64,000 nt of DNA from Vitrella brassicaformis CCMP3155. Taxonomy: Eukaryota > Protista > Chromerida. Positions 38,700-64,000 of this stretch are shown here, in pieces (positions within the stretch are counted from its first letter, which is position 1; every line of letters begins with the position of its first letter). Below the pieces are notes generated by a model. It searched no databases, had not been told where the DNA came from, and saw only the letters and a program-made list of their open reading frames with translations. The stretch is from contig CDMY01000439.1 of NCBI GenBank assembly GCA_001179505.1, positions 1 through 64,000 on the forward strand, given 5' to 3'. The position numbers and the translations under genes are program-made.

Positions 38700-40500
38700 T
38701 TTCACCTGACAGATCAGGCAGAAAGCCATCCCGATGATTCATTTCCATTCGCTTGACGTTGTCTTCCTTCCTTTTCCCTTTCTTTGTTCCCTTCGTTGCC
38801 TACTGACGCACACCACAGCCTCAAGGCCTTCTCACTCTTCCTCCTTCCTTTTTGCTGCTGATTCCTGAATAAGCGAACAACCCGAATCTATCTCGAGGCC
38901 GTTCTTCCAGCCCTTTCTCCTCTCCTTTCTCCTTTGCGAGCTTGTGGTTCGAGCTCGCATTTCCTGAAATGAAGCTTCTGGGCGTTTGTTCCGCTTCTTT
39001 CTTTGACTGCCGGTGCGTGTGGCCTCAGTGGGGAGCGGCTCATGCAAAAAAATCGCAAAACGAATTTGCCAGGTTCGAGAAAACCCGCAATTCGATCCTC
39101 ACTCGATCCAATTGGCAAATGAGCCCTTTCCGGCGATTTCGGTGGCCCTCTGAGCTCATCAGGAGCCTGAACGAAGGCCGTGAGTGACGCGGGGCACGAG
39201 TTTGGAGAAACAAGTCATGCGAGCTTCTGCGACACCGCGGCTCTCGAAACCCAAGAGGATTCGAACAAGACGGCAACCAAGTGGATGACGTCTTTTCCCC
39301 TACGCCCTCCTACCACATTGTTCGATCAGCGTTTGCCCTGGCGAATCAACTCAACCTGGAGATACATCAGATGGACATCAACACAGCATTTCTTAACGCC
39401 CCGCTGGACAAGCCTGTCTTTATGCGGTGCCCACCTGGATATGAGAAGCCCGGCCATGTTGTTCGTCTACGGAAGGCATCGTGGATGTGTTGTGATATGC
39501 TGTAACTGTTCCATCTGTGCACACACCACACCATTCGTGCTCATGCTTATGCTGATCTGTGCACTTGTCCACTGTGTGTGTGCGTTCGCTACCCAATGGT
39601 CATCTTCTGGATGCCTTTGTGCTTTCTTCGTGATTTTCTTTTCTTGAGCACATGCCGTGATGGTTCGTCTTGAGAGGGGGTGTCAGGATTGCCAGCTTGG
39701 CAAGACGAACCAGTGCGAGCTTGTGAGCTAGGGTAGATTGCTGTGTAACGGAGAGAGAGAGGTGAAGACAAGGAAAGACAAGGGAAGCGTTCTGAGGAGA
39801 CACGATCTTATCAGCCATCACCGAAGTGAGACCTGTGTTGACCACCCTTCATGATGCCATACATGGACAGAAACAACTTTGACTGACTGGCCAGTCCATT
39901 GGTCTTATTAAAGTAAAAGGCACTCTTACTCTGGGACTTACCGCCCAGCAGATCCTCTATTCAGCTAACTACAGGAAAGGTCCTCACCGGCCTTTTTCTC
40001 ACATTGTATCCTAGTGTAGAAAATTAGAGCCGTGTGTCTCCGCTCCGCGAGTCTATCAAATTCCCCCCTGCTGCCGTGTGTCGAGGGCGCTCGCAAACCA
40101 AAAGGGAAGGAGGAAGAGTGAGAAGGCCTTCAGGCTATGACGTACGTCGGTAGACAACGAAAGAAAGAAAGAAAGAAAGAAGAAATAAGACAACGCCAAC
40201 CAGCGAACCATCGGGATGCCTGCCTGCCTGCCTGATCTGTCAGAGTAGAAACGACAGAGAGAATGTCTGTCTGTTTCTGCAGCCCACGTGTGTCTGCCGG
40301 TAGTGTCTGTCGAGTGGACTGGACAAACCTCTTCCCTCACTGCGGCATCCCATCGGGCGCACCGCTCTCCAGTGACCGGCCCGCATTCAACCAACGTAAC
40401 GGCGACACACACAGAGAGGCAGTCAATCCGTTGACACACTGACACATCATATCATCATTCACGGAGTGGTTCCTTTGTCTAGTGTGACTGTGTGTGCAGG
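38700..40500. repeat. Rearranged copy of the dispersed repeat, split by a ~750-bp insert, plus an inverted piece at 38700-38850
   Basis: 38940-39252 and 40004-40500 together are the reverse complement of 15970-15170; the junction is contiguous in the 44.8-kb copy (gaaaccctcgttgtat). Confidence 0.85.
39254..39477 (+). mobile_element. Ty1/copia reverse transcriptase fragment (~75 aa)
   Basis: RGFEQDGNQVDDVFSPTPSYHIVRSAFALANQLNLEIHQMDINTAFLNAPLDKPVFMRCPPGYEKPGHVVRLRKA matches the copia RGFxQ..F.P..HQMDVxTAFLN..M..PPG..LxK block; no LTRs, gag or integrase seen. Confidence 0.92.
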
Positions 40501-42725: not shown

Positions 42726-44270
42726 TCATACTACCGATGGCTCTCGCTGACAATTATCACACACACAGACAGCACGAGATCTTCTGCTGGCCTCACTGTC
42801 GTTTACGGCTCGCTCCTCTTTGCTCACCTTGTGAGTACTGCTCGGTGCGGCCGCCGCGACCTTTCGCTGCACATGGGTGCGCCATGCAACCGTCCCGAAG
42901 CGGGATAGAACCGTCATAATAGTGAACAGGGCAGACACAACGAAGAGAAACGGATTTCTGGCCTCCGTCGCCCACATGATCGTCAGCACCAGGACCGGCA
43001 CTTCCAGCAGGGCAAGGAAAGCAATCCAGAGGTGTTAGCAGAGTGAGGGAGAGCCGCGGATCGAGTAGTGAAGAAACAGCGACACCACGTCAGCCAACGA
43101 TAAGCCCAGGATGATCAAGCCGACAGTTTGGTGGCCTTGCGCTTCTTCTTCCAGACGGCTCCTTGTTGTATCGAAGCACTCCTCATCAGCATCATCCCAC
43201 GGCGAACCGATGGGGGGGACCCCACAGATGGATCTTGCACGACGCCATGCAGTGTCCACCATCGACCACCTGATGAATTCCAGCCCCACTGCAGCATCGG
43301 TAATGAAGTCCATGGCCATTCCCACAACGGCCACCAGTTTATAGAAGCGAACGAAGGTGAGAATGTCCATCCGTTTGAGCCGCCGCTTGACCACCGAGTG
43401 GTACAGGATGGGCTCTATTTGCCGAGCCTTGGCTATTCGCTCGGCCGTCGGTGAGGGTCTCCACTCCGCCCGACGGCCGCAGCATGAGAGCCGGTTGTGA
43501 TCGACGTCGAGTTTCCTCTCACCCGTCGGGCTGGTCGATGCACGGACAATGCGTGGCTCCGACAAAACGATAAAGAGGGCCAACTGAAGAGAGACCGCAC
43601 CAGCCACCCACGCCAGTGTGCCGAAGCGGCCGGGGCCAAAGGGATCAGGTTTCAATGACACATAAACCGCGGTCGAGAAGATGCTCCCGGACAGGACGAT
43701 GGCCAGAACGAAAAAGAAGTAGATGATGCATAGAATGCCCCACCAAAGAGGCGGCGTGCACAGACTTCCCAGTCCAACGAGGACCATCAGAGAGGGCGGC
43801 CCCAAACCCACAATCACAAAGGGAACGAACAACAAACTTCCCTCGTGCTTACGGATGACAAAAAGCAAGTAGCTTATGCCGCCCCACCACCAGACTGCAT
43901 AGATCAGGACGAGGCCGATGATGAGAAGGAAATGCCTCATAGGGTAGTCCGTCAGCCACAACATCACACAGTGAGTCTGCAGCACCAGAAAGCCCCACGC
44001 ATCACCCTCCTCAAGCGAAGCATCCCCGTCGCCAAGCGGAGCCCGGCCGTCAACTGCAGGGGTGGAGACCGGTGTCGAGGTGGTGGTGGACACGCCTGAG
44101 AGCCGAGCGCCGCCCTCGCCATCTCCTTGAGCCTCCGGTTGATGCTTCGATGACTTCGCTGACCTTGTCGTCGTGACGTCCACTTCAGAAGCTGATTGTC
44201 TGAGGACGTCTGTGTCTGGGGGATCAGCCGTGGCGGGAGGAGCGACGGTGACGAACGTGGGCGGCTCCAT
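42726..44270 (-). CDS. Intron-poor multi-pass membrane protein (~7-8 hydrophobic segments) interrupted by one in-frame TAA at 43035-43037
   Basis: The 411-aa ORF continues in the same frame after TAA as HLWIAFLALLEVPVLVLTIMWATEARNPFLFVVSALFTIMTVLSRF.. Confidence 0.75.
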
Positions 44271-44489: not shown

Positions 44490-45010
44490 CAAACGCACTT
44501 CGAAGCCCTTTCTCCTCTCCTCCGGTCTCCTTCCTCCTTTGCGCTTGTGGCTCGAGCTCGCATTTCCTCGAATGAAGCTTCTGGGCGTTTGTTTCGCTTT
44601 TTTCTTTGACTGCCTGTGCGTGTGGCCTCAGTGGGGAGCGGCTCATGCAAAAAAATCGCAAAACGAATTTGCCAGGTTGGAGAAAACCGGCAATTCGATC
44701 CTCACTCGATCCAATTGGCAAATGAGCCCTTTCCGGCGATTTCGGTGGCCCTCTGAGCTCATCCCAAGCCTCGATGAAGGACGTGAGTGACGCGGGGGAG
44801 GAGTTTGGAGAAAAACAAGTCATGCGAGCTTCTGCGACACCACGGCTCCGGAAACCCTCGTTGTATTTCACTGTAGAAACCCAGAGCCGAGTGTCCCCTC
44901 TCCGCCACCCTATCAAATTGGGGCCTGATGCCGTGTGTCGAAGGTGCTCCAAACCAAAAGGGAAGGAGGAAGAGTGACAAGGCCTTGGCTAACGTACGTC
45001 AGTAGATGTT
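44490..45010. repeat. Inverted copy of the dispersed repeat (matches ~15520-15970)
   Basis: Shared gagctcgcatttcct..atgaagcttctgggcgtttg..caattggcaaatgagccctttccggcgatt. Confidence 0.9.
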
Positions 45011-45129
45011 TTTGGATCCTATCGTGGTCAAGGTGTGTGACCGCAGTGGCGGCGCAGAAGTCACCAGGATGATCCAGGTCCCGCCAACGTGGCAGGTAGG
45101 TGAGATACACTGACTGATCTGCCTGTAGA

Positions 45130-46720
45130 TGGCAGATTGGGATCCGCTCGCCTGGATCGTCGTGTGTTTGTTCGTTTGTTCGTGGTGCCTGCAGGAACCA
45201 CAGTTCGTTCAGTACGTCAAAGACTTATTCAACATCCAGTATGATTTCCTCGTGAAGGACAGCACAGGTAGGCACAGACAGGCGGACAGAGAGCAGACAG
45301 ACAGCACACACCAACGCGCAAGTTAGAACCGAGACCATCTGTGATTCTCGTTCTCGCTCAGATGTGTTCACCCCTGTGGCTTCCTTCAAGGAGGGCGAGA
45401 CCTACTTCATCGAGCGCACCGGCACTTCGGCTGCGGCTGCAGCTGATACAGTGGCTGCGTCGGGGCCGTCACAGACACCTGCCTGTCTGACGTAGGCGAT
45501 GTGTGTTGCTTTGGTCTGCCTGAACAAACCTGGTCTCTCCTGTCTTCTTTTTCGTTCAGACCATCTGCACTTGCGCCTTCCGGACGCAGAGAAGCTACTC
45601 CTGGTTGGGGAATTCTTCAACTGTGGCCTCGGCCTCTTCGCCTTCAGCGTGTGCTTCCTCTGTCGTGAGCCCATTCGGAAGGCTGTGGGAGAGGTCCTTT
45701 GGGACCTCACGCTCGTCTTCAAAGGACCCAGCACCTGTTTCTGCCCGCGTCCGTGGGTGCGATCCTCTCGGGGATCTGCCGCTGCTGCTGTCTTTGCCGG
45801 ACACCGCCAGCAACCTCGCCAGCAGCAAGAATCGCTGTCGAGTCTGACAGACATGCGGGAACAGCTTCTGAGCATGCCGCAGACGAAGTGTCCGTCGAAG
45901 CTACCCTCCTCATGAGCGAGGAGCCTGTCGGCCCGCTCGACAACGAACACGCCATCGTACAGTGAGATCTACCGGCTGCTCTATTCGTTGTCTGGTTGGT
46001 GACGAGGAGCCGGCGGCTGTGCTGCAAGCGCACCGCACGGTGAGAGGGCGGCGTTATATCGCTGATGGACTGAGTCACTCTTACGCTGTCTTAATTGCCA
46101 GCCTCTCAACAGTCCTTCCCGTGCTCGGCTCTCCCGTCCCGTTTGTGTTCAGGCCAAGCTCCTTCGCCCATCCGCACCTCCAGCACGGCGAGGTGGGCTC
46201 GCCGACCCCGACGTGCGTCCCATCTCCCACTGCAGTCAGACACTACCTACCGTAGAAAATGGCGTTTGGGCGCAGCGGCAATGACCCCTCGCGCAGCACA
46301 CCAAGGGAGAAGGTGAGAGTGAGGGCGGGGTGGAAGTGTGTGTGGCACAAACAGGCAGGTGGCTACAATACACATCTATGCGTGTGATGATATTCGTCAC
46401 TCACGGGTTCTTTATGAATCGACACATGTACTGAACTTCTGTCGCTGTCTGACGCATCCACTAACGTCATCGTGTCCGAAACATGTGCGTGTCCCTGCGT
46501 GTGTCGCACGGATGCCATCTTTGTTGGTTCCGTTCTGTGTTTCCTCTGTGTGTGTCAGGGCTGATTGGTACACGCGGCTCGGCTGGGGATCCTGGTGTGT
46601 CGCAGAGGCTTCGCAGAGTCGACGTGAAGCCGATGGCTTGCGGCACCGACGAGAAGGCTCACCGTTTGGGTATTGGGGCTCATTCCCCTTCCCCAAGACA
46701 GACAGATCAGGGAGGTGTAC
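45130..46720 (+). CDS. Multi-exon hypothetical gene
   Basis: Exons EPQFVQYVKDLFNIQYDFLVKDST and DVFTPVASFKEGETYFIER with GT-AG ends; the downstream frame is uncertain. Confidence 0.35.
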
Positions 46721-47099
46721 ATTGTACATCTAGCTATCTATGTGTGTGTTTGACGTGGTTGGCTGGCTGGCTCTATGGGTCCATCTACGACTGGTTTCAT
46801 GGATGCTGCGTAGCTAGCTACAGACATTTAATTATGCTACGTGCGTGTGTAGCCGATAAAATGCCCACCTACGTACGCAATGCTACACTATGGTACTCTA
46901 CTACACGCCAGGTATCAGCTCCAGCGGATTCAGCTGCACGCCGGCAAAGTCAAGCATACCTGAATCCCACATATCATATCATGCCACACACCACACCATA
47001 GGCACACATCACGAGCAAAATCCATGAACACACATGCATCTGTTCATTCGTTTGTTCGACTGTGCTGACCCCATCCGACGATTCCGCCGTCCGCTATTG

Positions 47100-50000
47100 C
47101 ACCCAAGTGAACAGTCAGCTCCTGAACCGACCGAGCGCCCGACCTGCGCAATCAATCGCACACACCATCAATCACAAAGACTCACAAGCACATGACACTC
47201 ACTCGGCATTGCATACCAGGAGAAGTCGAGGTAGCCGGGGAATGCGGCAATGAAGCTGTCGAACATGCCCGTCCTCACCACACTCATCACCAGCACCCCC
47301 ACAATCAAAAAGTGCAGTAAGGGCTCTATGATCAGCTGCAGAAGCGTCTCGAGCGTGCTGCAATTACATAATGCGGGAGGGAGACACTTCGATCCAATCC
47401 ATGAGGCTGTGAATGCTGTGAATGGGTGGCTGTCGTGTTGTGTTGCGTGTCGATCCGTAGTTCCTACCAGGTGACGAGGAAGTCTCGGTAGACGACTCTC
47501 TCGTCATCATCGCCTTCGCCGCGGTCGGCCAGCCAGTCGGAGAAGACAAACCTGCACGAGACATGTGGGTGCATTCATGGCGTGTGGGAGTGTGTGTCTC
47601 TTGAGGGACCGCCCAGCCAGCCAGCCGGGCTTGGCTTACATGAGTAGGAAGTACACGCAGAAGGAGCACCACAGGGCCGCCAGCACATATCCACACCGAT
47701 CTCGCAACCGCCATATCGACAGCCATCGCAGCTTCTGCATCAGCAGAGAGTGCATCGAAACAGTCGGTCGACAGTGCATCAAAACAGTCGGTCGACACAC
47801 AAAAAGTCTTTCGCCAGTTTGTCTGTCTCTGTGTCTCCTCCTCTCTCCGTCTGTCCGTCACCTGCTGCATGGGGAACAGCCCGCTGTGTTTGCCCAGCAC
47901 GGCGGTGTCAAGCGAGCCTTTGGCTTTGGACGTGAAGTTGGCCGATTGATGCCGTCGATCGCCACCCGTCCCTCCCAGCCCTGTTCCTGGTCGGATGGCT
48001 CCGGCGTGAGCGGGGTAGATGCACGGGGTGCCCTTGCGGAACAGGAAGTAGAGAGTAAGCGGAATCGGCTTGATACCAGAATCACACACACACCATGTCA
48101 TTGATAAAGCAATGCGTCCGTCCTCACACCGTCACCGTTACCTTGGCCAGTATAACCGCCCTGATACGTGAACACAATCCATCCATCCATTCAGAATATG
48201 TGACCGTGCAGTGCAAAAGGCTGGCTGGCGTCACGTCCCCCACCATATCAGTATGGCGAATTGGCGGATGGTGAAGGTGACCTCGAACCCTTCCGCCAGC
48301 TTGAAGTCCGCCAGGTGTCCGTCTCTTGTGAGGTCTCTCTCTCCGTATTGGTAAAAGAATGCCGCGACCAACAGCAGCCCCAGCACCACCGATCCGAACA
48401 CCAACGTCCTCTGCACGGCTGCAAGCGAAAAGACATACAGAAGAAACAAGCTTTACTTTTCTCGGCCGGCTTGATGCCTGGCTTGGTGCATGCCTGTGAG
48501 TGAGGGGTGAATGATGAACAGCTGCAGAAGTGGGTGATCCCGACGACACACCTCGCTGAAGAGGCGGGCCTTAGGCCACTCGATGTACTCGATTCGCCGC
48601 AGCGTCCTAGCCGTGATCGCGTCGACCTCTCTATTCACCTCCTCCCACGCTTCCTTGGCCGTCATGCGTATGGGCGCGCTGATGGTGTCTCGCCGCCCGC
48701 CTCGCTGCGCGGTGGGTTTGGTCGGGGGCTTTGTGGGAGGGGGTGGCTCTTGCTCTGGGTCGGGGAGCGACCGCTGCGTGTGGTGGTCCTCTTGCGCATT
48801 GTCGTGATTCTTGGGACTCAGCGGCTCCTTCTCCGTGCGCTTGACTGGCGAGCTGCAACCAGACAGGGCAGGCACCGGTAGACAGCAATGAATGCGATGC
48901 GCCTGTTCATCGACCCGTCCACCAATCCAACCTACCTGAGAGAGAGAGACGAGAGCATCTCCAGCACCTTCTTTGGTTTGCCTTCGCCTTTCTTCTGCCG
49001 ATCATCCTCATCGAACACAGCCACGCTCAGCCGCCCTTTGCCGCTCTCGCCGCTTTGAGACGCACGCTGCCGGGAGACATAGCCCTTGATCGCGTCATTG
49101 AGGTGCCGGTCGTCGCGTGCGAGGCCGTAGCTGGTCGGCTGTGCGGGATCTGCCGCCGACCGACTTGACGACATGACCTCGGATGGCTCGTCCTCGGGCT
49201 GCCTGACAGCGCCTATCTTGACTGACAGGAAGCTGACCTTGCCCCGCCACCATCGCTGGATGAGCAGACAGGCGGCTTGCTGCCGCTGCACTTCTGTTCA
49301 CAACAAGCAAATGTAAGCACATAAAGCACATGTACACAGATAGTATACGCAAGAAGTGACAGTGTATAAGCGAGGTCCAAAGGCAGCAGGCAAACAGACC
49401 TAGCAGCAGGCGGGCACGCAGGGCATCCCGAAGGACACCAGATCTAAATAAAGAGACGGTACACCCAGCACATGCAGATGGGGATGTGCCTCGCCATTGA
49501 TCGTACCTACCTGAGGAGATCGACCTCTTCTCGGTTGCAGCAGCCCTCAACGAAGTCATATTCCTCTTCTGCGTGGTGGGGCTGGTGTTGCTTAGGGCGG
49601 TGTGCTTGTCCATGTGCGTGCTGGTCGACCCCCCTCTGGTCCCTTTGACGGTTGCTCTCCATTTCGGGTCTCACTGCTGTCGACATCTGCATCCCTCCCG
49701 TCCTCTCCTCTTCTGACGACGCATCCACGTCATCGTGACTGCCCCTCAACCGCCGCCGCGGCTCCGTTACTCGCACAGAAAGGCTCTCAACGGGCTCAGT
49801 CTGGTCGGCCTCGGTCTTCTCCTTGCTCATGACATTGGTGAAGTGAGACGGAAGCCCCCGAGTCTTCTCTAAGTGCTCGTGGAAGGCCTGAAACACCATC
49901 TCCTGCAAGGACGGTACGCTCGACTTGACCCCCGCTATGATGGACCGGCGGCTCTTGGGCATGTGAGGGCCTCTGCGGGGGGTATTGGCAAACTGCGCAG

Positions 50001-53000
50001 CGATGCTGCCGAAACGGCGACTGCATCAGACACAGGCGAGAGATTGTGTCTCCGTGTGTGCAAGGAAGCCCTGACCTTCGTTTGGGAGTCTGCATGGCCA
50101 CCGCGGGATTGATGGTGGCCTCCATCTCCTGCCGGGCCTGGCTGAACTGCACCGCCACCAGCCTTAGATCGATGCCCTGCTCGAGGCTCACTGTGATGTA
50201 CTGTCTCATAAGGCGGATAGTCTGGAGCTCCTTGAGGTGGAGGGTGGCCTGTCTACCCGTTATGCGGTTGAAGGTCAGCTGCAGAGCCTGGCAGGGGTAG
50301 CTGTTGCAGCAGCAGTCGTAGCACCGACCGAAGCACTCCTCGCGCTGCTGACGGAGATACATGTCCTGTAACCATGGGAAAGAAACAAAGGATGGCGTCG
50401 ATGGATGCTCATCGATGAACATCCGTTACGGCCTTTTACTTGTCTGTATCTGGCCTCAAGCAGCCGATCAGACAGGTGCAAGTCCACTAGGTCACTATCA
50501 GACACCTTGTGCCGCATGTCGGACCAAAAGGCGAGGAGGAGACATATAACCAACACTGCAGCAACGAAAACAAAACACAATTCCACCTTTTCTTTCCCAT
50601 TTGTTGTCAGCTCACCGCCGCCCGCCACCGCGACGAACTGTGCTGCTGCATTCTTGTTCCATGCCGCCGCATCACCCAGCCGTTTGACTGAGCCCTCGCT
50701 GCCTTCAGCCACCGACGTCACACTGCTGTCCTCTATCACCGTACGGAACAACACACTGAACTCGCTCAGATGATGGCATTGGCAGACCACCGCATCAGCC
50801 GTCGAGGCGTTGGTATCGACCACACAACCTACAAAGCACAACACACCTTGCATGTATACGGGACGCATGTGGTGTGTTTGTGATACCATGGTGACTGACC
50901 TTCAGCGCTCCATGCCTTGTCGCTGGTCGACCAGAACCCACATCCCACTTCATCCCGCTGCACCAGGGACCCGTTGGCAGTGAGGTTGACCACACGGGCA
51001 GCCACATTCGCCGGACGGGGTAGCGTCAGGACAGCAGGCGCCGACAGTGCGCTGCCGTCCAACTTGACCTCTTGATTGCATCTTCTCACAGCCACGGTTG
51101 ATGAGCCGCCCCTGGCTGACCAGTTGGTCGTGTTGGTGTCATTCGTCTGAAAGAGCCCCTGCTCCCAGAAGACAAGCTGGGCGGTTGGAACGGGCAATCC
51201 GCCACTGATGACAGCACAAGGATCAACTGTTCCGCCGACCTGCAGCCGCCTCACTGACAGGCGGCTTGTGTCATTCAGAGAGGGCAAGACCACCCCCAGA
51301 TTGGCGTTGTCCGAGCTCGAGAGGCTCAGGCCATTCTGCGGATCCAGGAATGCGAGAGACATGTTGCAACTCTCTCCGGCCACTTCAAGCTGCTGCGAAG
51401 GGCCGCCACCGAGCGCAGAGAGAAGGACGTCACCCAATCGACCTGTGGACTCCCCAACACGCTCGGCAATCTCATATGCGCTGCTGCCGTCATGCATCAG
51501 CATCGCGTTATGTAGTTCCTGCGGTATCGCAGCTGCAGACGAGAGAAGCGCCTCGGCGGACTCGCGGACTCTGGTCTTGTCGCGGGCTGTGAGAGAAGAG
51601 GGCGCCTGCCACTCAGAGAGGGTCTGCCGCTGTTGTTGCTGCGTCTGGAGGGCGGGGAGGGACGCGGATGTCTCGACGACGCTGTCGAGGATAGACGCAC
51701 TCTGTCTGGCCATCGTCGCGTCATATCTGAGCTGGCCACGGTTGTCTGAACGACAAAGGGATGGCTGGAGCGTACAAGGGCATCGAATTGGGTGGCTTAC
51801 TTGATTGTCTCACGGAGCCGATGGTGACATTCAGGCTTGTTGCGGCAAGCAGGACCTCCCCTGCTGTGGTCGGCCGCGATGTGAGTCCACGCCGGCGACC
51901 CGCAAGAGTCTGAAAGAACACACATGCGTACACAGGAAGGCACACATGACTGTCACACACAGATGGATGTACGACAGCACTCACTCTGTTGAGGCTCGCA
52001 AGCACCGTTTTGATGACTTGCTTCTCCTCTCTCTGCAGCAAAGACGGGTCCTCCGCGGCAGATGTGGCCACGGTAATGGTCGCCAAAAGCTTGTTTTGAT
52101 ACTCCACAAAAGCCTCGTCGCTATCGTTTCCTGGGGTGGTGGGAGGATCCTCGTCTGGTGAGAAGATCAGGTCCTCTGCCCTCTGGATCTCTGCTTTCTC
52201 AAGCCGACTGACGTCCTGAGAGACAGCATCCAATGCAACACTGGGCTGTCTCATTGCTGCACTCAGTGCATGACCATACCGTCACCCACCGTGAGACGAT
52301 CCACGTCATCCGCGATAATGTCAAAATCCAACACTGGGGGGCTTGTGGTGGTCGAGGGGGCCTCTGTGGTCGTTGGCTGTGCACTGGTGCTGGTTGATGT
52401 GCTGGGCAAGGGTGTGGTTGTGACTTGAGCAGTGGTACTGGGATCACTCGTCGTCGTTGTTGTACTTGTGCTGGTGGTGCTGCTCTTGGTGGTTGTCGAT
52501 GTGCTTGTCGTGCTGCAAAAAGGGGGACATTTCATGCCTGTGTCTCCCGCCCACACAGGCCCTCTCGCAGCTGACCTTGTTGTGGTTGCTGGGCTGGGAG
52601 TGGTTGACGGAATGACAGTCGTCACCTGACCGAGAACACACACAAACGGTGTGGCCGGTGGCTGACCGCATTTGCGCATATGTCCCACAGGTTCAGGTGT
52701 GGTGGAGACACTCAATGGCAGAGAGGGGCCGGCTGCACAAGAAAGCGGGCATCTCACCAAAACACAGACAGGCAGTGGTATGCTGGCTCCCTCACCATAG
52801 TGCAGGGCTATGACCGCCGATCGGTTCTCCGCAGCCAGCTGGTTATCGGCGAAGTCAACAATGGCATGCGATTTGTTGAATTGGAACAGGAACATACTCC
52901 CGTTCTTCAATGCTGCCTCTGTGACGTTCACATCCACCCGTAAAGCCTTCAGGGCCACAAGGGCCCTGGGCGAGCTGACGTCGGTCACACTGTAGTCGAA

Positions 53001-55075
53001 CGCCGTGCTGTTGGCCGCCGTCATGTTGACCAGGCGCCGTAGGTCGGACACGGATCGGCGGACCAGCTCGTCGAAAATGATGTCGACGCTGAAAGAGGTC
53101 GTGTTGAACGAGGTGGCATTCTGGGCAATCCACGCATGAGGCTCGTTTACATCTGAGGAGCGGGGGCCAAAGAGGAATCTCACCAAATGCGAAAGAAAGC
53201 AGTACACAATGCAGTCAGTCCACGCCAGTGTGTCTCCCCACCGTGGACTGGGCCGCACGAAAGGAGTTCAGAGACCGCAGCGTCAGAATGCCCCTCCTTG
53301 CTGATGGCCCCCGAGTGCAGATAGCAGCCATTCGAGGAAGAGCCAACGGAGTCACTCTTGACTGTGTAGTGAGTGCAGCCGCTGAAAGCACACACATACA
53401 CACACAGATGCACCCTGTTGTTTGGCGACTCTCTGGACCGGATACCTTTTGTGGTGGCACTTGAGTGCGCAGTCGAAAGGCTTGAGCACCTTGGGGTAAT
53501 GATCCAGCTGAGTGGCCGTAGACCACTCCTGTCTGTCGATGCGACACCCCCTGTGAATGACCAGCGGCATCGACGGCAGGCTCCCCTGTCCATCGCTTTG
53601 CCCATCAGCCAGCCCCTCAAGAGCCATAAGCGTAAACAACCCTTTCGCAGGGGTCGGATCGATGGTGACCGTGGCTGTCATGTCACTCTCAGGCCAGTCT
53701 GCCACCGAGACGTCAGCACTTGTGGTGCCGAGCACCACAAGCCGCTCCGGTCTGAATGTGCCCTGGTCAACTGGTACGGAGAACTTGACAGTGATGCTGA
53801 AGGATCCAGTCGAGGCGAAATCATTCACGTTAGGCACCGTCAAAGCGACAGCTGGAGCAGGGGCTGACAGACACAAAAATTTTCTCGCCAAATGGAAGGC
53901 AATTTGTGTCTCTCGGCTTACTGCATTCGCCGGCTGGGGACGGCTCGACCTCACAAATGTAAGGCTCCGACGAGCCACAATCTTCAGAGAGCAGAGCCGC
54001 CATGTGTCCGTGGTCGTGCTCATGTGCGTCCCAGTGGATCGCTGCGCAGTCGTAATCGCTGTCGCCGTGGGGATGGTATGGCTCCCATTCGGCCTCGTGG
54101 ATGTTAGCCTGGTGGTACTCAGAGCTGGGCGTCCAGCTGCCTGGCGTCAGGATGCCCTCACGGTCTGCACGAGGGAGGGCACACAAAGGAGACACCCGTG
54201 GTCCTGTTTCTGTTTCAGTGCCCGGCCTTGCCATCCTGCTGCACCTCTCTCGGCGCCCCCGAAGTCCGGGGTAGAGGGCTCCGAGAACGACCCACTCTCG
54301 TTCTGATGCCACCAAAGAGAGGCCAGGCCAATTGATCGTCGCCACATGACGCCATCCATCCCAAGAGTGTCCTTACTCGTCTGTAGTCAACCCATATGTG
54401 GGCGTGTGATGAAGTCTGCCCCCTGATGAACTCCTGCAGCCACCACAGCTCGGCAGGGTCACTCAACGTCACCTGCACGCGAAGGATGCATGGATGGCTC
54501 GTCGAATGAATGGCGATTTCTTGGCTTGCCTACCAGGTGGTCATAGTCTCCGGCGGCCCCTGCCACATTGCAGGCTATCTTTGCACCGTTGAAGCTCTTC
54601 TGCGGCGACGTGAACAGCTTATAGCAGCTGCAGGAGCCCTTTCGATGACGAAAACCATTCGGGCAAATGCCAGTGTGGGGCGTTGCCGTGGCCGCAAACA
54701 CTCCACAGCGGAAGCCTGCAGTGCAAAAGAACAACACGAGGTGAGGCTGGGAGGGAGGGGGGCGGGTGTGTGATGGATGGATGGATGGACGGCACTTGCC
54801 ATAGATAAGATACTGGCCGATGATGAGCATCGACACGCTGTAGGCCCAGAGAAGGCCCTCCAACGTCAGGAGGTCCATGATGGCCCGCCAACTCTGATAA
54901 AGATTACTACACAAGATGGGGGGAGTGAGGGGGGAGCGTCGAGACGCGAGCTAACGCGAGAAACCCTGATGAAGGGAATTTCTTTTGTCCATCCATCCAT
55001 CCCTTTTCATCCATGCGTCATCGTCGTGCGTCCAAAAGCATCCACCACACAAAGACAAAGCCGCTCACTCACCAT
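47100..55075 (-). CDS. Polycystin-1-like GAIN/GPS receptor A: C-type lectin, Ig-like, PAN-like and mucin stalk, then GAIN-GPS and ~5 TM, with an IQ-containing loop
   Basis: CPNGFRHRKGSCSCYKLF..ACN and DC..YICE (C-lectin); Thr/Ser tract ~52330-52620; CGFWSTSDKAWSAEG/C..VVCQCHHLSEFSVLF (GPS); TM1; IQRWWRG; HPLLQLF..RTLVFGSVVLGLLLVAAFFY resembling the PKD1 TM2 region. Confidence 0.85.
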
Positions 55076-59317: not shown

Positions 59318-62300
59318 ATGCAGCGAACCGACGCCTTCCTCGCCCTGTTTGCCTTCAGTGCCCTTCTTGCTCTCACAAATGCTGCCCCCTCTGTCACGAT
59401 TTCGCTTCCGGAGGGCAACGTCACCAACCAGCAGTCTGTCCCCATCGACTTCCGCTTCTCGGAGCCGGTTCGCCAGTTCAACGACTCGGCAACATTCATC
59501 GACCTCAAGTGCAAGCAGTGCAGCATTGATCTCACCGAGCTACCCGACGGGCGGTCCTTTTCGGCGACGCTGAACATCGAACACAGCGAGACGGAGGATG
59601 ACCTCATCACCGTCACCCTGACCGACGCTGTCACCGACCTTGCGGGGAACCCCCTCGAGCCTACGAATGTGACCATCGCTTTCAGTGAGCAAGGGGCCCG
59701 GCCCTGTGCATCTGGCGGCAGCGAGGGGGCACCATTTGCATTTCTGTTTCTCATGCGTGCCATGCAGGTGGAGCTATCGAGATCGAGCTGCTTTCCGATC
59801 CTGCTCTTCCGCTCTACAAAAATCAATACTTCACAAACGGGGCCACAGTCACTGCCATCCTCCGCTTCGACACTGACGTGGTCGATGCCGTCATCAGCTT
59901 CCAGAACGGTCTACGACTGATCGAGCCTGATGGGACCACGGTGTCTTCACAGACGCCCGTTTTCTCATCGGAATACACGGACTGTGGGGAGGCGTCAGCA
60001 AAGAAGGCGTGTCTCAATGTGACGTATACCGTGCTGACCGAGGGACTGTGGACGGTGGAGCTACCCAAGGACAGCGTTGCTGACATGGCGGGCAACCAAA
60101 ATGACAAAGTAGACATCGTCTTCTCTGTGGGTAAGTCAGAAGAGCCTGTCTGAGCAATCTGTTGCTCTGCTGTTCCATCTTGTTTTCTTGCTCAGATAGG
60201 ACAGGTCCGGTGCCGCGGTTCTACTCTCTGCTTTCAGACGTGGGTCTGCCGGACATGTCCGTCTCAGTCAATTTCCAGGAGAAGGTCACCGGAGTGACAG
60301 TCGATGATTTCACCTTCACCGGCCCACTCACGTACACCAATCTGGCTGTCAAGGAGCGGCTGGACGAGGCATGGACCTTCTCGTTCGACGCGACGAATGA
60401 GGGGTCGACCACGATCGGGGTCGTGTGCGCCGGTAGCGATATTGTTGATGTCGCTGGGAATCCATGCGTTGACGATGCAGAGAGCTCCATCAATCTCACC
60501 TACAGTGAGCCAATAAAGAAGCAGACAGAAGAGATATCACATCGTGCTAGATGACGAAGACCGTCTGTGTCTCGCCATTTGTAAAACAGACTCCAGTATT
60601 CTGACCTTTCTCTGGGAGGGAGGCTGGGACAAGTGGACCAACCAGCAGACATATACGCGAAATGGAACCTTTACATGGGCTGTCCAGTCGTTCCCGGTGG
60701 GCATCTTCTCTTCTGACGAGGCCACGCTTGTCGACGCCCAGCTGAATGCCGCGAAAGACGAAGTTGTTTTCACAATGGACTTCGATCAGCCTCCAGAGGA
60801 CACGACGCTAAACGCTACGCTTCTCGTCTATGGGGACATTGACGACACTGCCGGGATCACTCATCTGGTTGGTGCGCGTACACGAGTGAAGTACGACCCT
60901 TGGCCGCCCGATGCACGCATTGAGATCGAATATACGGGAGAGGGCAAGGACCCCAAGGACAAGGACTTGCCGTATTCCGTCTGTCCCCCAAACGACCTGC
61001 AACTGCGATTCTTCTTTTCTGAGGACGTCCGCGACTCGATCAGCCTCCAAGGTGCAATCGGCATCAGCGCTTCGGCGGGCGCCGAAGCCATCGCCCCCCA
61101 AGTGACAAACAACTTAGCGTCACCGCAGGCTGGCGAGTACGCAACAGAGCATACCTACACTGTGCACCTCGCTCCGGGTAATGCAAAGGCGATCAACGGA
61201 TTTGTCGACTTCATTTTACCGGAAGGCTCAGTCTCCGACCGGGCTGGCAATTCAAACAGAGCAGAAAACAAGACCCTCTTCATCGGTGAGCAAGGCAGTT
61301 TATTCGTCGAGGAGAGGAAAAACATGGCTTTCTTTGCACTTAGATGGTGTTAATCCTGACTGCGCCTTGTCTCTCCTCGAGCCGGCCTCACCGGATTCGT
61401 TTGTCGTGGAAGCTGTGTCCAGCCTGGCTTGTAGCGAGACTATCAAAGACTGTCGAGATCACGCGTTCCTGCTCATCATCCTCGACCAGCAGGGCCAGCA
61501 GGTTGTCGGCACAGAGACAGAGCTCGGAATCGGGCAACACGTTGACAGGACGGAGACAGGGGAGAAGCTGCTGGTCAACAGGAAACTGCATGAGGACCAG
61601 CTGCTGAGGGTCAAGAAGAAGGCTTGCCGCGACTATGCTGGCAACCGGGGACCAGCGGCCAATATAGAAGTGGTCATACCGAAGCTCCCTCCAGGGGCGA
61701 CCCTCCCTCCAGCAAGTGGGCGAGAGCACTTTTGTCCACGACCATTTTTGCCTCATTGCGCTCGCGTCTCCATTTAGACACCTTCAGTCTGGTGAAGAAC
61801 CTTACTGGGCCTGGTGGGAGAACTGACGTCTTCGACATTGATATGGAAACTGTAGGTTTTCCAAGAAGCGAGACATGTGTTCACGTCTGCGTTGCTTGTG
61901 TTTTGAAGGTTACGGATGATATCGATGCCATAAGTGACCCGGACGGCATTGCGGAAAGCGAGATCACCCGAAGTGCAGATGTGCTGTTCGAAGACCTCCC
62001 CCCTGATCTGGGCAGCGCATTCAGCCTTCACACACACAAGCTATATGCTGCAGTCACACTGGTACGCAAGGGAACGGGCCGAAGTCCCAGCCATGGAGAT
62101 GACTGCATTTGAATCAGGCAAGCACAGCTAAATACAGGCCGGATGAAATTCCTGAAGGCCGGCCGCGACCCACAGGATCGATAGGCAAAGGCGAAGAGGA
62201 TGGTGATCCTGTCTATATCATGGCTCGAGACCTCTTCAGCTCGCTCATTCAGGTATGCACTCATGCACACATCGATACCCAGAGCGTCGCATGCATGTCA

Positions 62301-64000
62301 GGCGTATCGGCTGCGCACGGCGAGCTTGACGGAGGTCCCCATATCCTCGGCTGAAGCTCTTCTCTCAGCCAAAGCGGTGGAGACAGCCGTGGATCTCTTC
62401 GAGTCCACGACAACATTTGACGTGCCATCGGGGCAGAAAGGGGCGGAGATATTCGATCTCCAGGTCGACATTACTCGCCAAACAGTGGAATCATGGCGAC
62501 TTGAGGACTGGGTACAGAATGTCTCGAACCCACGAATGACCCCCGTAACGCTCAGCCAGAAGGAGCGCAGCAAGATCCGCCAGGCTGTAGAAACCTCACT
62601 TACGTCTGCTGCCTCCCTCGGGAGACAAATCGGAGGCCTCCCAGCCACCGTGGGACCAAGCGAGACCGCCACCCTCACACGAAATATCGGCGAGTCTACT
62701 GGCCGCCTTGGCGATTCCTCTCTCTACCTGCTGGGTGATCCGGAAAGCACTCTGGAGGTGTCAGGGAGGTAAGACGCAAAGAGGCTGCATTCGCGAAAGC
62801 TGTAAAGATGATGTGTCATTGATTGCAGCAAGCTGGACTGTCAGATGGCGCTGCGGGTGGTGAATACCTCATCAAGACTTGCTCTTAACATCTCGGGCAC
62901 GAATGTCTCAGTCGCGGTACCAAATGTGACGATCCCAGTCCCAAGCGCAAAATCATCACGCCGCCTCCGGCGACATCTTCAAGCAAGCCAGCCTCCCCAA
63001 TGCGCGAGTCAGCTTTCAACTCCCTCAGGGCAGTTAATTTGGTGGCGAGATGGTCTGTACTCGGGCGGCAGACAGGACGACACAGCGGCGGTCGACGCGA
63101 CGGTCGAGAGCATGCTGAACAAGCCACAGAGGGAGCTGGAGACAAGCGCTTGGGAGGGCAAGGGCGGCACCCTCACGGCCGCGGTGAGATGCATAGGCAG
63201 ATTCACCAAAGGCCCGCACCTCCAGTGTCTCACCGTATGCAGGCGAGATATTGCGACGAAGAGGTCCCGTTGCAGCTGCAGAGGACGGAAGAGCCTATTG
63301 TTTTGCACATTCCCAGACCTAACTCCGACAGCAACAGCCGCCAGGGCACTTTTGGCGATGAGTACGGGGTTGTGAAGATCAACGGGCGGCTGGAGGTGAT
63401 GAACACGACCCAGGCAATGAAGCACGGGCGTCCATTCATCATCACGACGCAGCTCGCATGTGGGTACTTCGACTATGCAACACAGCAATGGAGCACGGCA
63501 GGTACAGACGGTCAGACGGGGAGCAGCGGTATCTCTACTTTTTACCATCGTCGTGTCTCTGCTTCCAGGCTGTTATCAGAACACCTCCCTGACAACCGCC
63601 GACACAATCGTTTGCGAGTGCTATCACCTATCAGACTTCAGCGTCGTGTTCAGGTCCACCTCACCCCACAAATGCAGGCAGAAATGAGTGGCTCCCGCAT
63701 GTTTGGCCTTCTGTGCAGTACGGTAATTAGGGACAGCAGCTTCGCCAGCGTCATTGCTGAATCACAGGAGGCGCTTAAGCGACTGGCAGATACCCGCGAG
63801 TGGGAGAAGAATGTGGCTGCACGATTCATCCTTTTCGAGGTAGCGATCATGCTGCTCTTCCTCGTCCTGGCTGTCTGGTGGGACCGCACGCACAAGTGAG
63901 CAAAGCTCAGCCAGCGGAGGCATCTTGCACAATCTCCAGATGTTGTCAAAATGTGAACGTGCAGGATGTCAGACGATGATCTGATGGACATGTGGATGAC
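59318..64000 (+). CDS. Polycystin-1-like GAIN/GPS receptor B with tandem bacterial-type Ig-like repeats; runs off the right edge
   Basis: Signal peptide MQRTDAFLALFAFSALLALTNA; repeats ending DLAGN, DMAGN, DVAGN, DRAGN, DYAGN with FSEPV/FQEKV; GESTGRLGD shared with receptor A; CGYFDYATQQWSTAG/C..IVCECYHLSDFSVVF GPS; TM ILFEVAIMLLFLVLAVWW. Confidence 0.88.

What the first reader, a model, noticed from the sequence alone, without database searches (positions are those of the whole stretch)
47100..55075. Polycystin-1-like autoproteolytic receptor with only ~5 TM, no PLAT and no channel half; IQ-containing loop instead
Seen: C-type lectin, Ig-like, PAN-like and mucin segments, then a GPS with an intact HL/S cleavage motif (~50764-50772). 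After that come TM1, a long cytoplasmic loop containing IQRWWRG (~49250-49290) and about four more hydrophobic segments ending near 47.1 kb. Known: polycystin-1 has GAIN-GPS, TM1, PLAT, TM2-5 and then a 6-TM channel-like domain, and is cleaved at HL/T. Inference: this is a stand-alone version of the N-terminal 5-TM half, with a calmodulin-type site where PLAT would be. It could be a glycan or mechano-sensing receptor class in an alveolate alga.
Basis: partly seen in the sequence, partly recalled or inferred. Interest (0 to 1): 0.72.

Follow-up and report, generated by a model that had tools for sequence, protein, structure and literature searches.

The report
Self-cleaving adhesion receptor, novel five-helix tail
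A 28-exon gene of the alga Vitrella brassicaformis encodes a surface receptor of about 1,944 residues that joins binding modules and a self-cleaving GAIN domain to a five-helix membrane part matching neither adhesion GPCRs nor polycystin-1. It is one of about ten such genes, found so far only in this species.

Summary
On the minus strand, 54878 to 46901, a 28-exon frame without stops encodes about 1,944 residues. In order it has a signal peptide, a C-type-lectin-like head, Ig-like and Apple-like segments, a mucin stalk and a GAIN domain. The GPS is intact (HL|S at 50772-50764). Then come TM1, a ~530-residue loop with IQRWWRG (49261-49241), four more helices and a 54-residue tail. There is no PLAT, no 7TM and no channel half. 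A plus-strand spliced transcript lies 35 nt past the stop.

The window is Vitrella brassicaformis contig CDMY01000439.1. The public annotation cuts this gene in two (1,725 aa and 230 aa) inside TM3. The cut falls at an intron that is spliced in the mRNA of the neighbouring paralogue, so I read it as one gene.

About ten Vitrella paralogues share the same post-GPS chassis under different ectodomains. No relative was found outside Vitrella.

The family's GAIN profile and fold match adhesion-GPCR GAIN domains. The five-helix part matches nothing known. "Polycystin-1-like" is therefore an analogy of layout, not shown homology.

The joined spliced protein was not searched or folded. No RNA covers this gene. 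Cleavage and calmodulin binding are inferred.

The parts
46901..54878 (-). Whole coding region: 28 exons, 1,944 codons, stop at 46901-46903
   Evidence: The model was built from splice sites and frames and refined by homology. It has no internal stop. The annotated start at 54878 and end at 46901 agree with it.
54800..54878 (-). Exon 1: start codon and hydrophobic signal peptide; GC-AG intron follows
   Evidence: A hydropathy peak covers residues 3-21. The donor reads gcaagt.
53922..54715 (-). Exons 2-5: C-type-lectin-like domain, split by three introns
   Evidence: Pfam Lectin_C is sub-threshold on exon 5 (E 0.06, profile positions 57-106 of 107). The cysteine and tryptophan pattern is visible in the translations. 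phmmer against PDB found nothing.
53242..53863 (-). Exons 6-7: Ig-like (bacterial Big-type) segment, then a Cys-patterned Apple/PAN-like segment
   Evidence: Pfam Big_5 is sub-threshold (E 0.12). PAN is not detected in this gene, though Pfam PAN_1/PAN_4 are on record for paralogues P0005, P0008 and P0010.
52290..52732 (-). Exons 9-10: Thr/Ser/Pro-rich mucin-like stalk
   Evidence: Seen directly in the translation.
50616..52215 (-). Exons 11-14: GAIN domain (helical subdomain A, beta subdomain B, GPS) and the stalk up to the start of TM1
   Evidence: These exons align with the paralogues' GAIN regions. The family profile hits the GPS of adhesion GPCRs in PDB. An AF2 model of paralogue P0001 residues 800-1245, with these exons in its alignment, matches the latrophilin and BAI3 GAIN domains (Foldseek E 1.5e-7, prob 1.00).
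50758..50784 (-). GPS core CQCHHLSEF; predicted cleavage between Leu1067 and Ser1068 (HLS = 50772-50764)
   Evidence: Pfam GPS scores 23.4 bits against a cut-off of 22.5.
50644..50766 (-). Predicted tethered peptide (SEFSVLF) and conserved stalk of about 41 residues before TM1
   Evidence: The pattern [ST]xF[SAG]x[LV]F is conserved in all paralogues. It aligns with the HLTSFSILM of ADGRF1.
50527..50643 (-). TM1, including a 60-nt in-frame GT-AG intron (50615-50556) removed on homology
   Evidence: With the intron removed, TM1 is collinear residue for residue with P0001 and no paralogue has the insertion. If the intron is retained, a hydrophobic helix is still there.
50076..50365 (-). Cytoplasmic juxtamembrane exon: Cys cluster and the conserved motif ..TLHLxELxxIR..
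   Evidence: It is conserved in the paralogues. It is also present in the transcript-derived P0006.
49241..49443 (-). Conserved helix of about 35 residues ending in the IQ-type motif: mini-exon 49443-49400 plus the start of exon 49293-48936 (IQRWWRG = 49261-49241)
   Evidence: Pfam IQ is sub-threshold here (16.2 bits) and in three paralogues. The helix is conserved in all paralogues.
48494..48668 (-). Conserved cytoplasmic pre-TM2 module (W..VN.EVD .. RR.EY.EW .. RRDHP); GC-AG intron follows
   Evidence: It is 67% identical to P0001. Invariant columns are listed.
48351..48407 (-). TM2
   Evidence: Hydropathy score 2.33. It aligns with the TM2 of the paralogues.
48030..48287 (-). TM3 with an invariant Lys-Pro, spread over three exons including the 19-nt mini-exon 48160-48142 (AVILAK)
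   Evidence: Alignment. The intron after the Lys (48141-48069) sits at the same position as an intron spliced in the mRNA contig of P0001.
48069..48141 (-). Intron at which the public annotation cuts the gene in two (model A ends at 48124, model B starts at 48101)
   Evidence: Searches give the two called genes (1,725 aa with Pfam GPS, and 230 aa = P0013). The last 219 residues of P0013 are exactly the end of my model.
47542..47686 (-). TM4 (crosses one intron), preceded by a basic stretch
   Evidence: Hydropathy score 2.45. Alignment.
47249..47357 (-). TM5: one long helix with a conserved Glu/Gln-Pro
   Evidence: Hydropathy. The AF2 model of the paralogue shows a single helix of 39 residues here, but the model is low-confidence.
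46901..47248 (-). Cytoplasmic tail of about 54 residues in two small exons (47143-47070, 46959-46901) plus the end of the TM5 exon; no further helix
   Evidence: It is collinear with the paralogues' C-termini, ending ..LIPGV against ..LIPGL in P0001. It is identical to the end of P0013.
46000..46866 (+). Neighbouring plus-strand spliced transcript, not part of the gene; it bounds the 3' end
   Evidence: RNA contigs of runs X1 and X2 show GT..AG joints at 46038>46152 and 46310>46557.

Best explanation
**What it is.** This is one gene. It encodes a receptor of about 1,944 residues that belongs to a family of about ten genes seen so far only in Vitrella brassicaformis. Each member has a different adhesion-type ectodomain, followed by a GAIN domain and a conserved C-terminal chassis. 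In this gene the ectodomain is lectin-like, Ig-like, Apple-like and mucin segments.

**The chassis.** It runs: tethered-peptide stalk, TM1, a loop of about 530 residues, then a four-helix module with a short tail. The loop carries a Cys cluster and a conserved IQ-type helix.

**Likely mechanism.**
- The GAIN domain cuts itself at HL|S in the secretory pathway (inferred from an intact motif and fold).
- The N-terminal fragment of 1,067 residues stays bound non-covalently (inferred).
- Ligand binding or pulling on that fragment changes how the peptide SEFSVLF and its stalk sit against the five-helix bundle (inferred by analogy with adhesion GPCRs and polycystin-1).
- The signal passes to the large cytoplasmic loops, where the IQ helix could bind calmodulin or a related EF-hand protein (inferred).

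**What is shown.** The gene structure, the GPS, the family-level GAIN fold, the five hydrophobic helices, the absence of PLAT, 7TM and channel parts, and conservation of the chassis across paralogues.
For: **Gene model**
- Searches give 28 exons with no stop.
- Every post-GPS exon is collinear with paralogues P0001, P0003 and P0005.

**GAIN and GPS**
- Pfam GPS is above its cut-off on one exon.
- The family GAIN profile hits ADGRF1, ADGRL3, ADGRG3 and latrophilin-1.
- The AF2 model (pTM 0.66) matches 4DLQ and 4DLO at E about 1e-7.

**Five helices**
- Five helices follow the GPS in this gene and in all eight paralogues scanned.

**No known post-GPS domain**
- Pfam finds none except sub-threshold IQ.

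**One gene**
- The annotation split lies inside TM3, 22 nt apart.
- It falls at an intron position that is spliced in the full-length mRNA contig of P0001. That contig, L002, carries an ORF identical to the 2,238-aa protein.
- The transcript-derived P0006 also carries GAIN-B through the C-terminus in one ORF.

**End of the gene**
- The C-terminus is homologous to the paralogues' ends.
- A convergent plus-strand transcript reaches 46866.
- Repeats lie further down.

**Family range**
- Searches return only Vitrella proteins.
- A metagenome scan found none.
Against: - No RNA contig covers 47000-52000 in the two small RNA runs laid. Splicing and expression of this particular gene are therefore unproven.
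- The public annotation calls two genes.
- The 60-nt intron in TM1 and the two GC-AG introns rest on homology alone.
- The model of the four-helix module is poor (pLDDT 54), so helix count and packing rest on hydropathy and alignment.
- IQ, Lectin_C and Big_5 are all below Pfam thresholds.
- The GAIN fold was modelled on a paralogue about 30% identical, not on this gene. Its spliced protein has no reference and was not joined for any search or fold.
- Self-cleavage needs more than the motif, and some GAIN domains with intact motifs do not cleave.
Confidence: 0.75

Rival explanations
1. It is a true but very divergent member of the polycystin-1 (PKD1/REJ) family. It would keep only the GAIN-TM1-loop-TM2-5 half, having lost PLAT and the six-helix channel-like half.
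For: - The order of parts is the same as the N-terminal half of polycystin-1: GAIN, TM1, a large cytoplasmic loop, then four helices with a sizeable TM3-TM4 loop.
- For two paralogues, the nearest Pfam-named ESM-Atlas cluster to the four-helix module is the same PLAT-bearing cluster, at 0.79 and 0.78. Six of the ten best named hits share that family or clan.
- From my own knowledge, sea-urchin REJ proteins show that helix number varies in that family.
Against: - Pfam finds no PLAT, REJ or PKD_channel at E <= 1.
- A profile of the module finds no PDB chain at E <= 10. From my own knowledge, PDB holds polycystin-1 and PKD1L3 membrane parts; I did not confirm that here.
- The GPS profile's best matches are all adhesion GPCRs.
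- Atlas scores under 0.8 are reached by a third of shuffled proteins, according to the tool's own note.
- The two queries are paralogues, so they are not independent.
Confidence: 0.15
2. The public annotation is right and there are two genes. One would be a 1,725-residue GAIN protein ending after two and a half helices. The other would be a separate 230-residue membrane protein.
For: - Two gene models are on record, at 54878-48124 and 48101-46901.
- No RNA read bridges the junction.
- Another paralogue, P0012, is also annotated as a stand-alone C-terminal protein.
Against: - The cut falls in the middle of TM3.
- Model B starts at an ATG inside an intron, and its first 11 residues match no paralogue.
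- The homologous intron is spliced in the mRNA of P0001.
- P0012 has a GPS-bearing fragment called 1.4 kb upstream, so it too looks like a split model.
- P0001 and P0006 carry both halves in one ORF in RNA.
Confidence: 0.06
3. The gene is an unexpressed or decaying duplicate of the family, so its reading frame has no present function.
For: - No RNA contig lies over 47000-52000 in runs X1 and X2, while the neighbouring paralogue's mRNA was assembled whole in a public RNA run.
- By my hand count, about 8 of the 66 positions invariant in the other paralogues' C-module are changed here.
Against: - 28 exons keep frame over 5.8 kb with no stop and with usable splice sites.
- The GPS cysteines, tryptophans and HLS are intact.
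- Most invariant positions are kept.
- The RNA runs are small (25-28 million letters), are kept only as contigs, and contigs drop rare transcripts.
Confidence: 0.1
4. Same protein, different output. The conserved four-helix module, with its invariant Lys-Pro in TM3 and Glu/Gln-Pro in TM5, would oligomerise into an ion- or solute-conducting unit. The GAIN fragment would gate it and the IQ-bound calmodulin would modulate it, rather than the protein acting as a scaffold-type receptor.
For: - Polar residues are invariant inside TM3 and TM5.
- An IQ motif next to a membrane module is typical of calmodulin-regulated channels (my own knowledge).
- The low-confidence model shows a beta hairpin in the first outer loop.
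Against: - No pore-type motif or channel family was detected.
- The model is too poor to read packing.
- Matches to channels in fold searches lie at noise level.
Confidence: 0.12

Closest known systems
Adhesion GPCRs (class B2; e.g. latrophilin/ADGRL, ADGRF1, BAI/ADGRB)
   Same: - Both have a modular adhesion ectodomain with a mucin stalk.
- Both have a GAIN domain with four Cys, two Trp and H-L-S/T at the cleavage site.
- The hydrophobic peptide after the cut (SEFSVLF) resembles the TxFAVLM type.
- These are the best sequence and fold matches of the family's GAIN domain.
   Different: - No seven-helix domain follows. Pfam 7tm_2 is absent, and five helices are arranged as 1 + 4 around a ~530-residue loop.
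- The stalk between the cut and TM1 is about 41 residues. The 2012 GAIN paper gives 5-6 linker residues after the cleaved strand (PMC3321182).
- According to PMC12716839, the GAIN-7TM link is restricted to holozoans.
Polycystin-1 family (PKD1, PKD1L1-3, PKDREJ, sea-urchin REJ proteins)
   Same: - Both have a GAIN/GPS before TM1.
- Both have a large cytoplasmic loop after TM1, then four helices.
- Both have a C-type lectin in the ectodomain.
- Both are non-GPCR GAIN proteins.
   Different: - No PLAT in the loop, no REJ module, no TOP domain and no six-helix channel-like half.
- No sequence-profile match to solved chains.
- There is an IQ-type helix in the loop instead.
GAIN-domain proteins of other protists (Tetrahymena has more than 8; also Dictyostelium), reported by Arac et al. 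2012 (PMC3321182)
   Same: These are GAIN domains outside animals, including in another alveolate.
   Different: The passages I read of that paper describe the GAIN and GPS parts of those proteins, not their membrane parts. No ciliate protein was recovered by my searches with the Vitrella module. Kinship of the membrane parts is therefore unknown.

Membership tests
GAIN-domain autoproteolytic proteins | GPS motif: four Cys, two Trp, His-Leu-Ser/Thr at the cut | tested here: met
   Pfam GPS scores 23.4 bits against a cut-off of 22.5 on one exon. The motif CGFW..W..C..CQCHHL|SEF is read directly.
GAIN-domain autoproteolytic proteins | Whole GAIN fold: helical subdomain A plus beta-sandwich subdomain B enclosing the GPS | tested here: met
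   Met at family level. The AF2 model of paralogue P0001 800-1245 had this gene's exons in its alignment (pTM 0.66, pLDDT 60.6). It shows five long helices followed by strands. Foldseek matches 4DLQ at 1.5e-7, 4DLO at 2.2e-7, and also CELSR1, ADGRL3, BAI2 and GPR110. This gene's own spliced GAIN was not folded.
GAIN-domain autoproteolytic proteins | Actual self-cleavage | not testable with these tools
   This needs expression of the domain and of a Ser1068 or His1066 mutant.
Adhesion GPCR (class B2) | Seven-helix secretin-like domain directly after the GAIN domain | tested here: not met
   Pfam finds no 7tm_2 or any 7TM family at E <= 1. Hydropathy gives five helices, arranged 1 + 4.
Adhesion GPCR (class B2) | Hydrophobic tethered peptide right after the cut | tested here: met
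   SEFSVLF here and [ST]xF[SAG]x[LV]F in all paralogues. It aligns to the ADGRF1 peptide. Agonist activity is untested.
Polycystin-1 family | PLAT domain in the loop after TM1 | tested here: not met
   Pfam finds no PLAT at E <= 1 in the loop exons or in the post-GPS parts of seven paralogues.
Polycystin-1 family | Eleven helices with a C-terminal polycystin channel-like half (PKD_channel) and TOP domain | tested here: not met
   The protein ends 54 residues after TM5. The paralogues end the same way in RNA. No PKD_channel is found. No coding continuation lies downstream.
Polycystin-1 family | REJ module before the GAIN domain | tested here: not met
   Pfam finds no REJ on this gene's exons, on full-length P0001 and P0003, or in the precomputed Pfam lists of the other paralogues.
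Polycystin-1 family | Sequence or fold kinship of the membrane part with TM1-5 of polycystin-1 | tested here: inconclusive
   The profile search against all PDB chain sequences gave 0 hits at E <= 10. The fold searches are uninformative because the model is poor. There is a weak Atlas lead to a PLAT-bearing cluster at 0.78-0.79.
IQ calmodulin-binding motif | Match to IQxxxRGxxxR in an accessible helix | tested here: inconclusive
   Pfam IQ scores 16.2 bits here and 12-16 bits in three paralogues, against a cut-off of 20.3. The core IQxxxRG is present, and the helix is conserved in all paralogues. Binding is untested.
C-type lectin-like domain | Match to the Lectin_C profile | tested here: inconclusive
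   Only the last exon of the domain could be scored alone: 14.5 bits, E 0.06, cut-off 22.6. There was no PDB hit by phmmer. The domain is split over four exons, which were not joined.

The most novel reading that the evidence does not exclude
Vitrella would have built, independently of animals, a third class of GAIN receptor. Adhesion modules and a self-cleaving GAIN domain with a tethered peptide would be coupled to a lineage-specific five-helix module that is related to neither the seven-helix GPCR fold nor polycystin-1. That module would report to Ca2+/calmodulin through a conserved IQ helix. The GAIN tethered-peptide switch would then be a portable device that works on unrelated membrane modules.
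Probability: 0.35. Interest if true: 0.75.

Novelty: new variant of a known kind. Interest (0 to 1): 0.55.

Why it matters
- **A different partner for GAIN.** GAIN domains are studied almost only as parts of adhesion GPCRs and polycystin-1. A recent survey states that the GAIN-7TM link is restricted to holozoans (PMC12716839). It also says structurally complex N-terminal fragments appear restricted to holozoans.
- **What this family shows.** A chromerid alga has about ten genes that pair elaborate, variable ectodomains and an apparently cleavage-competent GAIN domain with a different, conserved membrane part.
- **If the tethered peptide acts on this five-helix module.** That would show the switch does not depend on the GPCR fold. 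It would also give a small natural system for asking what a GAIN domain needs from its membrane partner.
- **Annotation.** The public annotation is corrected: two gene models should be merged here. At least two other family members look mis-modelled.
- **Limits.** The proteins are already in public databases under automatic names, and no function has been tested. The finding is solid but of moderate reach.

Tried and rejected
1. **RNA support for this gene.** The only RNA-like runs (X1, X2) cover 46000-46866 and nothing over 47000-52000.
2. **Full HMMER search of 1.84 billion representatives with the GAIN exon.** It gave four hits. Two are Vitrella paralogues. P0002 and P0004 are low-complexity or Sushi-repeat chance hits.
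3. **Fold of the four-helix module.**
   - AF2 gave pLDDT 54 and pTM 0.37.
   - Foldseek against PDB had a best E of 0.9.
   - The Atlas shape search gave TM <= 0.28.
   - No fold was assigned.
4. **ESM-Atlas feature search.** Unnamed clusters from arthropods, giant viruses and ciliates scored 0.90-0.92, with low recognition. I treat these as generic membrane-protein likeness. The PLAT cluster at 0.78-0.79 is kept only as a lead.
5. **PhoLip_ATPase_C hit on P0013 (18.6 bits, cut-off 28.3).** Rejected as hydrophobic-helix likeness.
6. **Sub-threshold Pfam hits on single exons (WSN, SOG2, YdaT_toxin, DUF3054, V_ATPase_I).** Rejected as chance.
7. **The 411-residue multi-helix ORF at 43035-44270 as a possible "channel half".** Rejected for four reasons:
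   - it has its own ATG;
   - it has no Pfam match;
   - a plus-strand transcript and repeats separate it from this gene;
   - the paralogues end where this gene ends.
8. **Ectodomain likeness to paralogues.** None was found outside the GAIN domain.
9. **Metagenome scan with the module alignment.** The first try failed for lack of conserved columns. The second found no relative.
10. **The annotated 1,725-aa protein itself.** It could not be fetched as a reference. My count through the same exon is 1,725 codons before the annotated read-through of 5 codons, so the two models differ by about 5 residues somewhere.

Full report
**Source and setting.**
- The window is the first 64 kb of contig CDMY01000439.1 of Vitrella brassicaformis CCMP3155 (GCA_001179505.1). 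Window and record coordinates coincide.
- GC content is about 57%. Genes are rich in short introns.

**Check of the observation.**
- I read the sequence and set splice sites by frame and consensus. I then corrected three sites by alignment with paralogues:
  - a 44-nt mini-exon (49443-49400) that restores the frame before the IQ exon;
  - a GC-AG intron after ..HPSLT (donor at 48493);
  - a shorter exon ending at 48244, so that TM3 reads as in the paralogues.
- A 60-nt in-frame GT-AG intron inside TM1 (50615-50556) is also removed on homology.
- The result is 28 exons, 5,835 nt and 1,944 codons with no internal stop, from the ATG at 54878 to the stop at 46901.
- Pfam finds GPS above its cut-off on a single exon (23.4 bits).
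- Hydropathy gives a signal peptide and five helices after the GPS.
- Pfam support for the ectodomain labels is weak because the domains are split by introns. Lectin_C has E 0.06, Big_5 has E 0.12, and PAN has no hit.

**A rule I followed.**
- The spliced protein has no reference. It was never handed to a search or fold tool; every search used single exons by reference or database paralogues.
- I joined the exons only inside one local script, to count codons, stops and hydropathy. The script printed only 19-residue hydropathy windows and short motifs, never the whole protein.

**Relatives.**
- A full HMMER search with the 271-residue GAIN exon found only two real relatives, both from Vitrella.
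- P0001 (2,238 aa) is encoded in this same window, on the plus strand from 59318 and running past the window end. It is the object of the neighbouring note s1-242865. The two paralogues lie head to head, with one small gene between them.
- Three word-seeded searches added P0003, P0005 to P0011 and P0012. All are Vitrella proteins with automatic names such as "GPS domain-containing protein", "Apple domain-containing protein" and "GAIN-B domain-containing protein".
- That makes about ten loci.
- A scan of JGI metagenome contigs found none.
- A search of the paper library found no paper that joins Vitrella with GAIN, GPS or polycystin terms among those listed.

**The conserved chassis.** All members share the following, in order:
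- the GPS with HL|S or HL|T;
- the peptide [ST]xF[SAG]x[LV]F;
- a conserved stalk;
- TM1;
- an acidic juxtamembrane motif;
- a Cys cluster followed by ..TLHLxELRxxR..;
- a helix of about 35 residues ending in AAxxIQRxxR;
- the module W..xN.EVD..RRxEYxEW..RRDHP;
- TM2, an outer loop, TM3 with an invariant Lys-Pro, and an inner loop with GRHSGxF;
- TM4, an acidic outer loop with YxDF, TM5 with Glu/Gln-Pro, and a tail of about 55-80 residues.

The ectodomains differ. P0001 has Big repeats. Others have PAN/Apple and DUF4215. This gene's head has no detectable likeness to any of them. In the C-module this gene is closest to P0001, at 33-67% identity per exon. By my hand count it keeps most of the 66 positions invariant in the others.

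**One gene or two.**
- The public annotation has two models: 54878-48124 (1,725 aa, Pfam GPS) and 48101-46901 (230 aa, P0013).
- The last 219 residues of P0013 equal the end of my model exactly.
- The cut lies in the middle of TM3. Model A reads through a donor to a stop, and model B starts at an ATG inside the intron.
- In P0001 an intron lies at the same point (after ..ISK). It is spliced in the RNA contig L002 (Logan, ERR558152), whose ORF is identical to the 2,238-aa protein.
- The transcript-derived P0006 also spans GAIN-B to the C-terminus.
- P0012, a 458-aa "stand-alone" C-module, has a GPS fragment called 1.4 kb upstream, so it is likely another split model.
- I therefore read one gene, with the caveat that no RNA covers it.

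**End of the gene.**
- The last two exons are collinear with the paralogues' ends.
- RNA contigs of two runs show a plus-strand spliced transcript over 46000-46866, 35 nt from the stop.
- Further down lie dispersed repeats and a separate ORF with no family match.
- There are no channel exons.

**What the parts are.**
- *GAIN.* The family profile hits the GPS of ADGRF1 (5.5e-8), ADGRL3, ADGRG3, ADGRG6, CD97, latrophilin-1 and BAI3. An AF2 model of the P0001 GAIN region (pTM 0.66) has five long helices followed by strands. It matches the GAIN domains 4DLQ and 4DLO and six others at E between 1e-7 and 1e-4.
- *Post-GPS part.* Pfam finds nothing but sub-threshold IQ. A profile of the four-helix module finds no PDB chain at E <= 10.
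- *Four-helix module.* Its AF2 model is poor. Three structure searches give only noise.
- *Hint towards polycystin-1.* The only one is a PLAT-bearing Atlas cluster as nearest named neighbour, at 0.78-0.79 for two paralogues. That is within the chance range stated by the tool.

**Mechanism.**
- Shown: the architecture and its conservation.
- Inferred from what is established for GAIN domains (PMC3321182) and adhesion GPCRs:
  - self-cleavage at Leu1067|Ser1068;
  - a non-covalently held N-terminal fragment of 1,067 residues;
  - a C-terminal fragment of 877 residues whose first residues act on the helix bundle when the ectodomain is engaged or pulled.
- By the positive-inside rule, with the ectodomain outside, the long loop, the TM3-TM4 loop and the tail are cytoplasmic. 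The IQ helix therefore faces calmodulin.
- The rivals are listed with their tests in the rival explanations.

**Comparison and novelty.**
- The protein works like an adhesion GPCR or polycystin-1 at its outer half.
- It fails the defining membrane-part tests of both families.
- GAIN domains in protists are known, including more than eight in Tetrahymena (PMC3321182).
- A 2025 survey states that GAIN and 7TM are linked only in holozoans, and that complex N-terminal fragments appear restricted to holozoans (PMC12716839).
- A conserved GAIN-plus-five-helix family with rich ectodomains in a chromerid is, as far as my searches show, undescribed. It is a new variant of a known kind.
- Interest is moderate: a real, clean architecture with a corrected gene model, but no functional data. 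Possible kinship with polycystin-1 remains open.

Noticed in passing
window 59318-64000 (+), continuing to 67589 of the record; locus L001 10001-18272: This is the neighbouring paralogue P0001 (2,238 aa: Big_12/Big_5 repeats, GAIN, the same five-helix chassis). It lies head to head with this gene, with one 314-aa gene between them. Its mRNA is assembled whole in a public RNA run.
   Followed up: yes
window 46000-46866 (+): A spliced plus-strand transcript (introns 46039-46151 and 46311-46556) has no matching called gene at these coordinates. It may be a 3' part of the 127-aa gene called at 44774-45668, or an unannotated RNA. It converges on this gene's stop.
   Followed up: partly
window 54799-54716 and 48493-48419 (-): Two introns appear to use GC donors (gcaagt, gcatgc). 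The second is required to match the paralogues residue for residue. Gene predictors limited to GT-AG would mis-model such genes in this genome.
   Followed up: partly
L004 7936-8547 and 10001-12220 (contig CDMY01000459.1): Another family member seems to be split by annotation into a 149-aa GPS fragment and the 458-aa protein P0012. Its tail differs from the rest of the family.
   Followed up: partly
P0007 versus P0006: The genome model P0007 lacks the Cys-rich juxtamembrane segment that its own transcript-derived version P0006 carries. An exon has probably been missed in the annotation.
   Followed up: no
window 38940-39210 / 44543-44813; 38547-38653 / 45993-46099: A 271-nt direct repeat (94% identical) and a 107-nt inverted repeat (91%) flank the region downstream of the gene. 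They are probably copies of a dispersed element.
   Followed up: partly
window 43035-44270 (-): An ORF of 411 residues has about six hydrophobic segments and no Pfam match. The annotation calls only 250 residues of it.
   Followed up: partly
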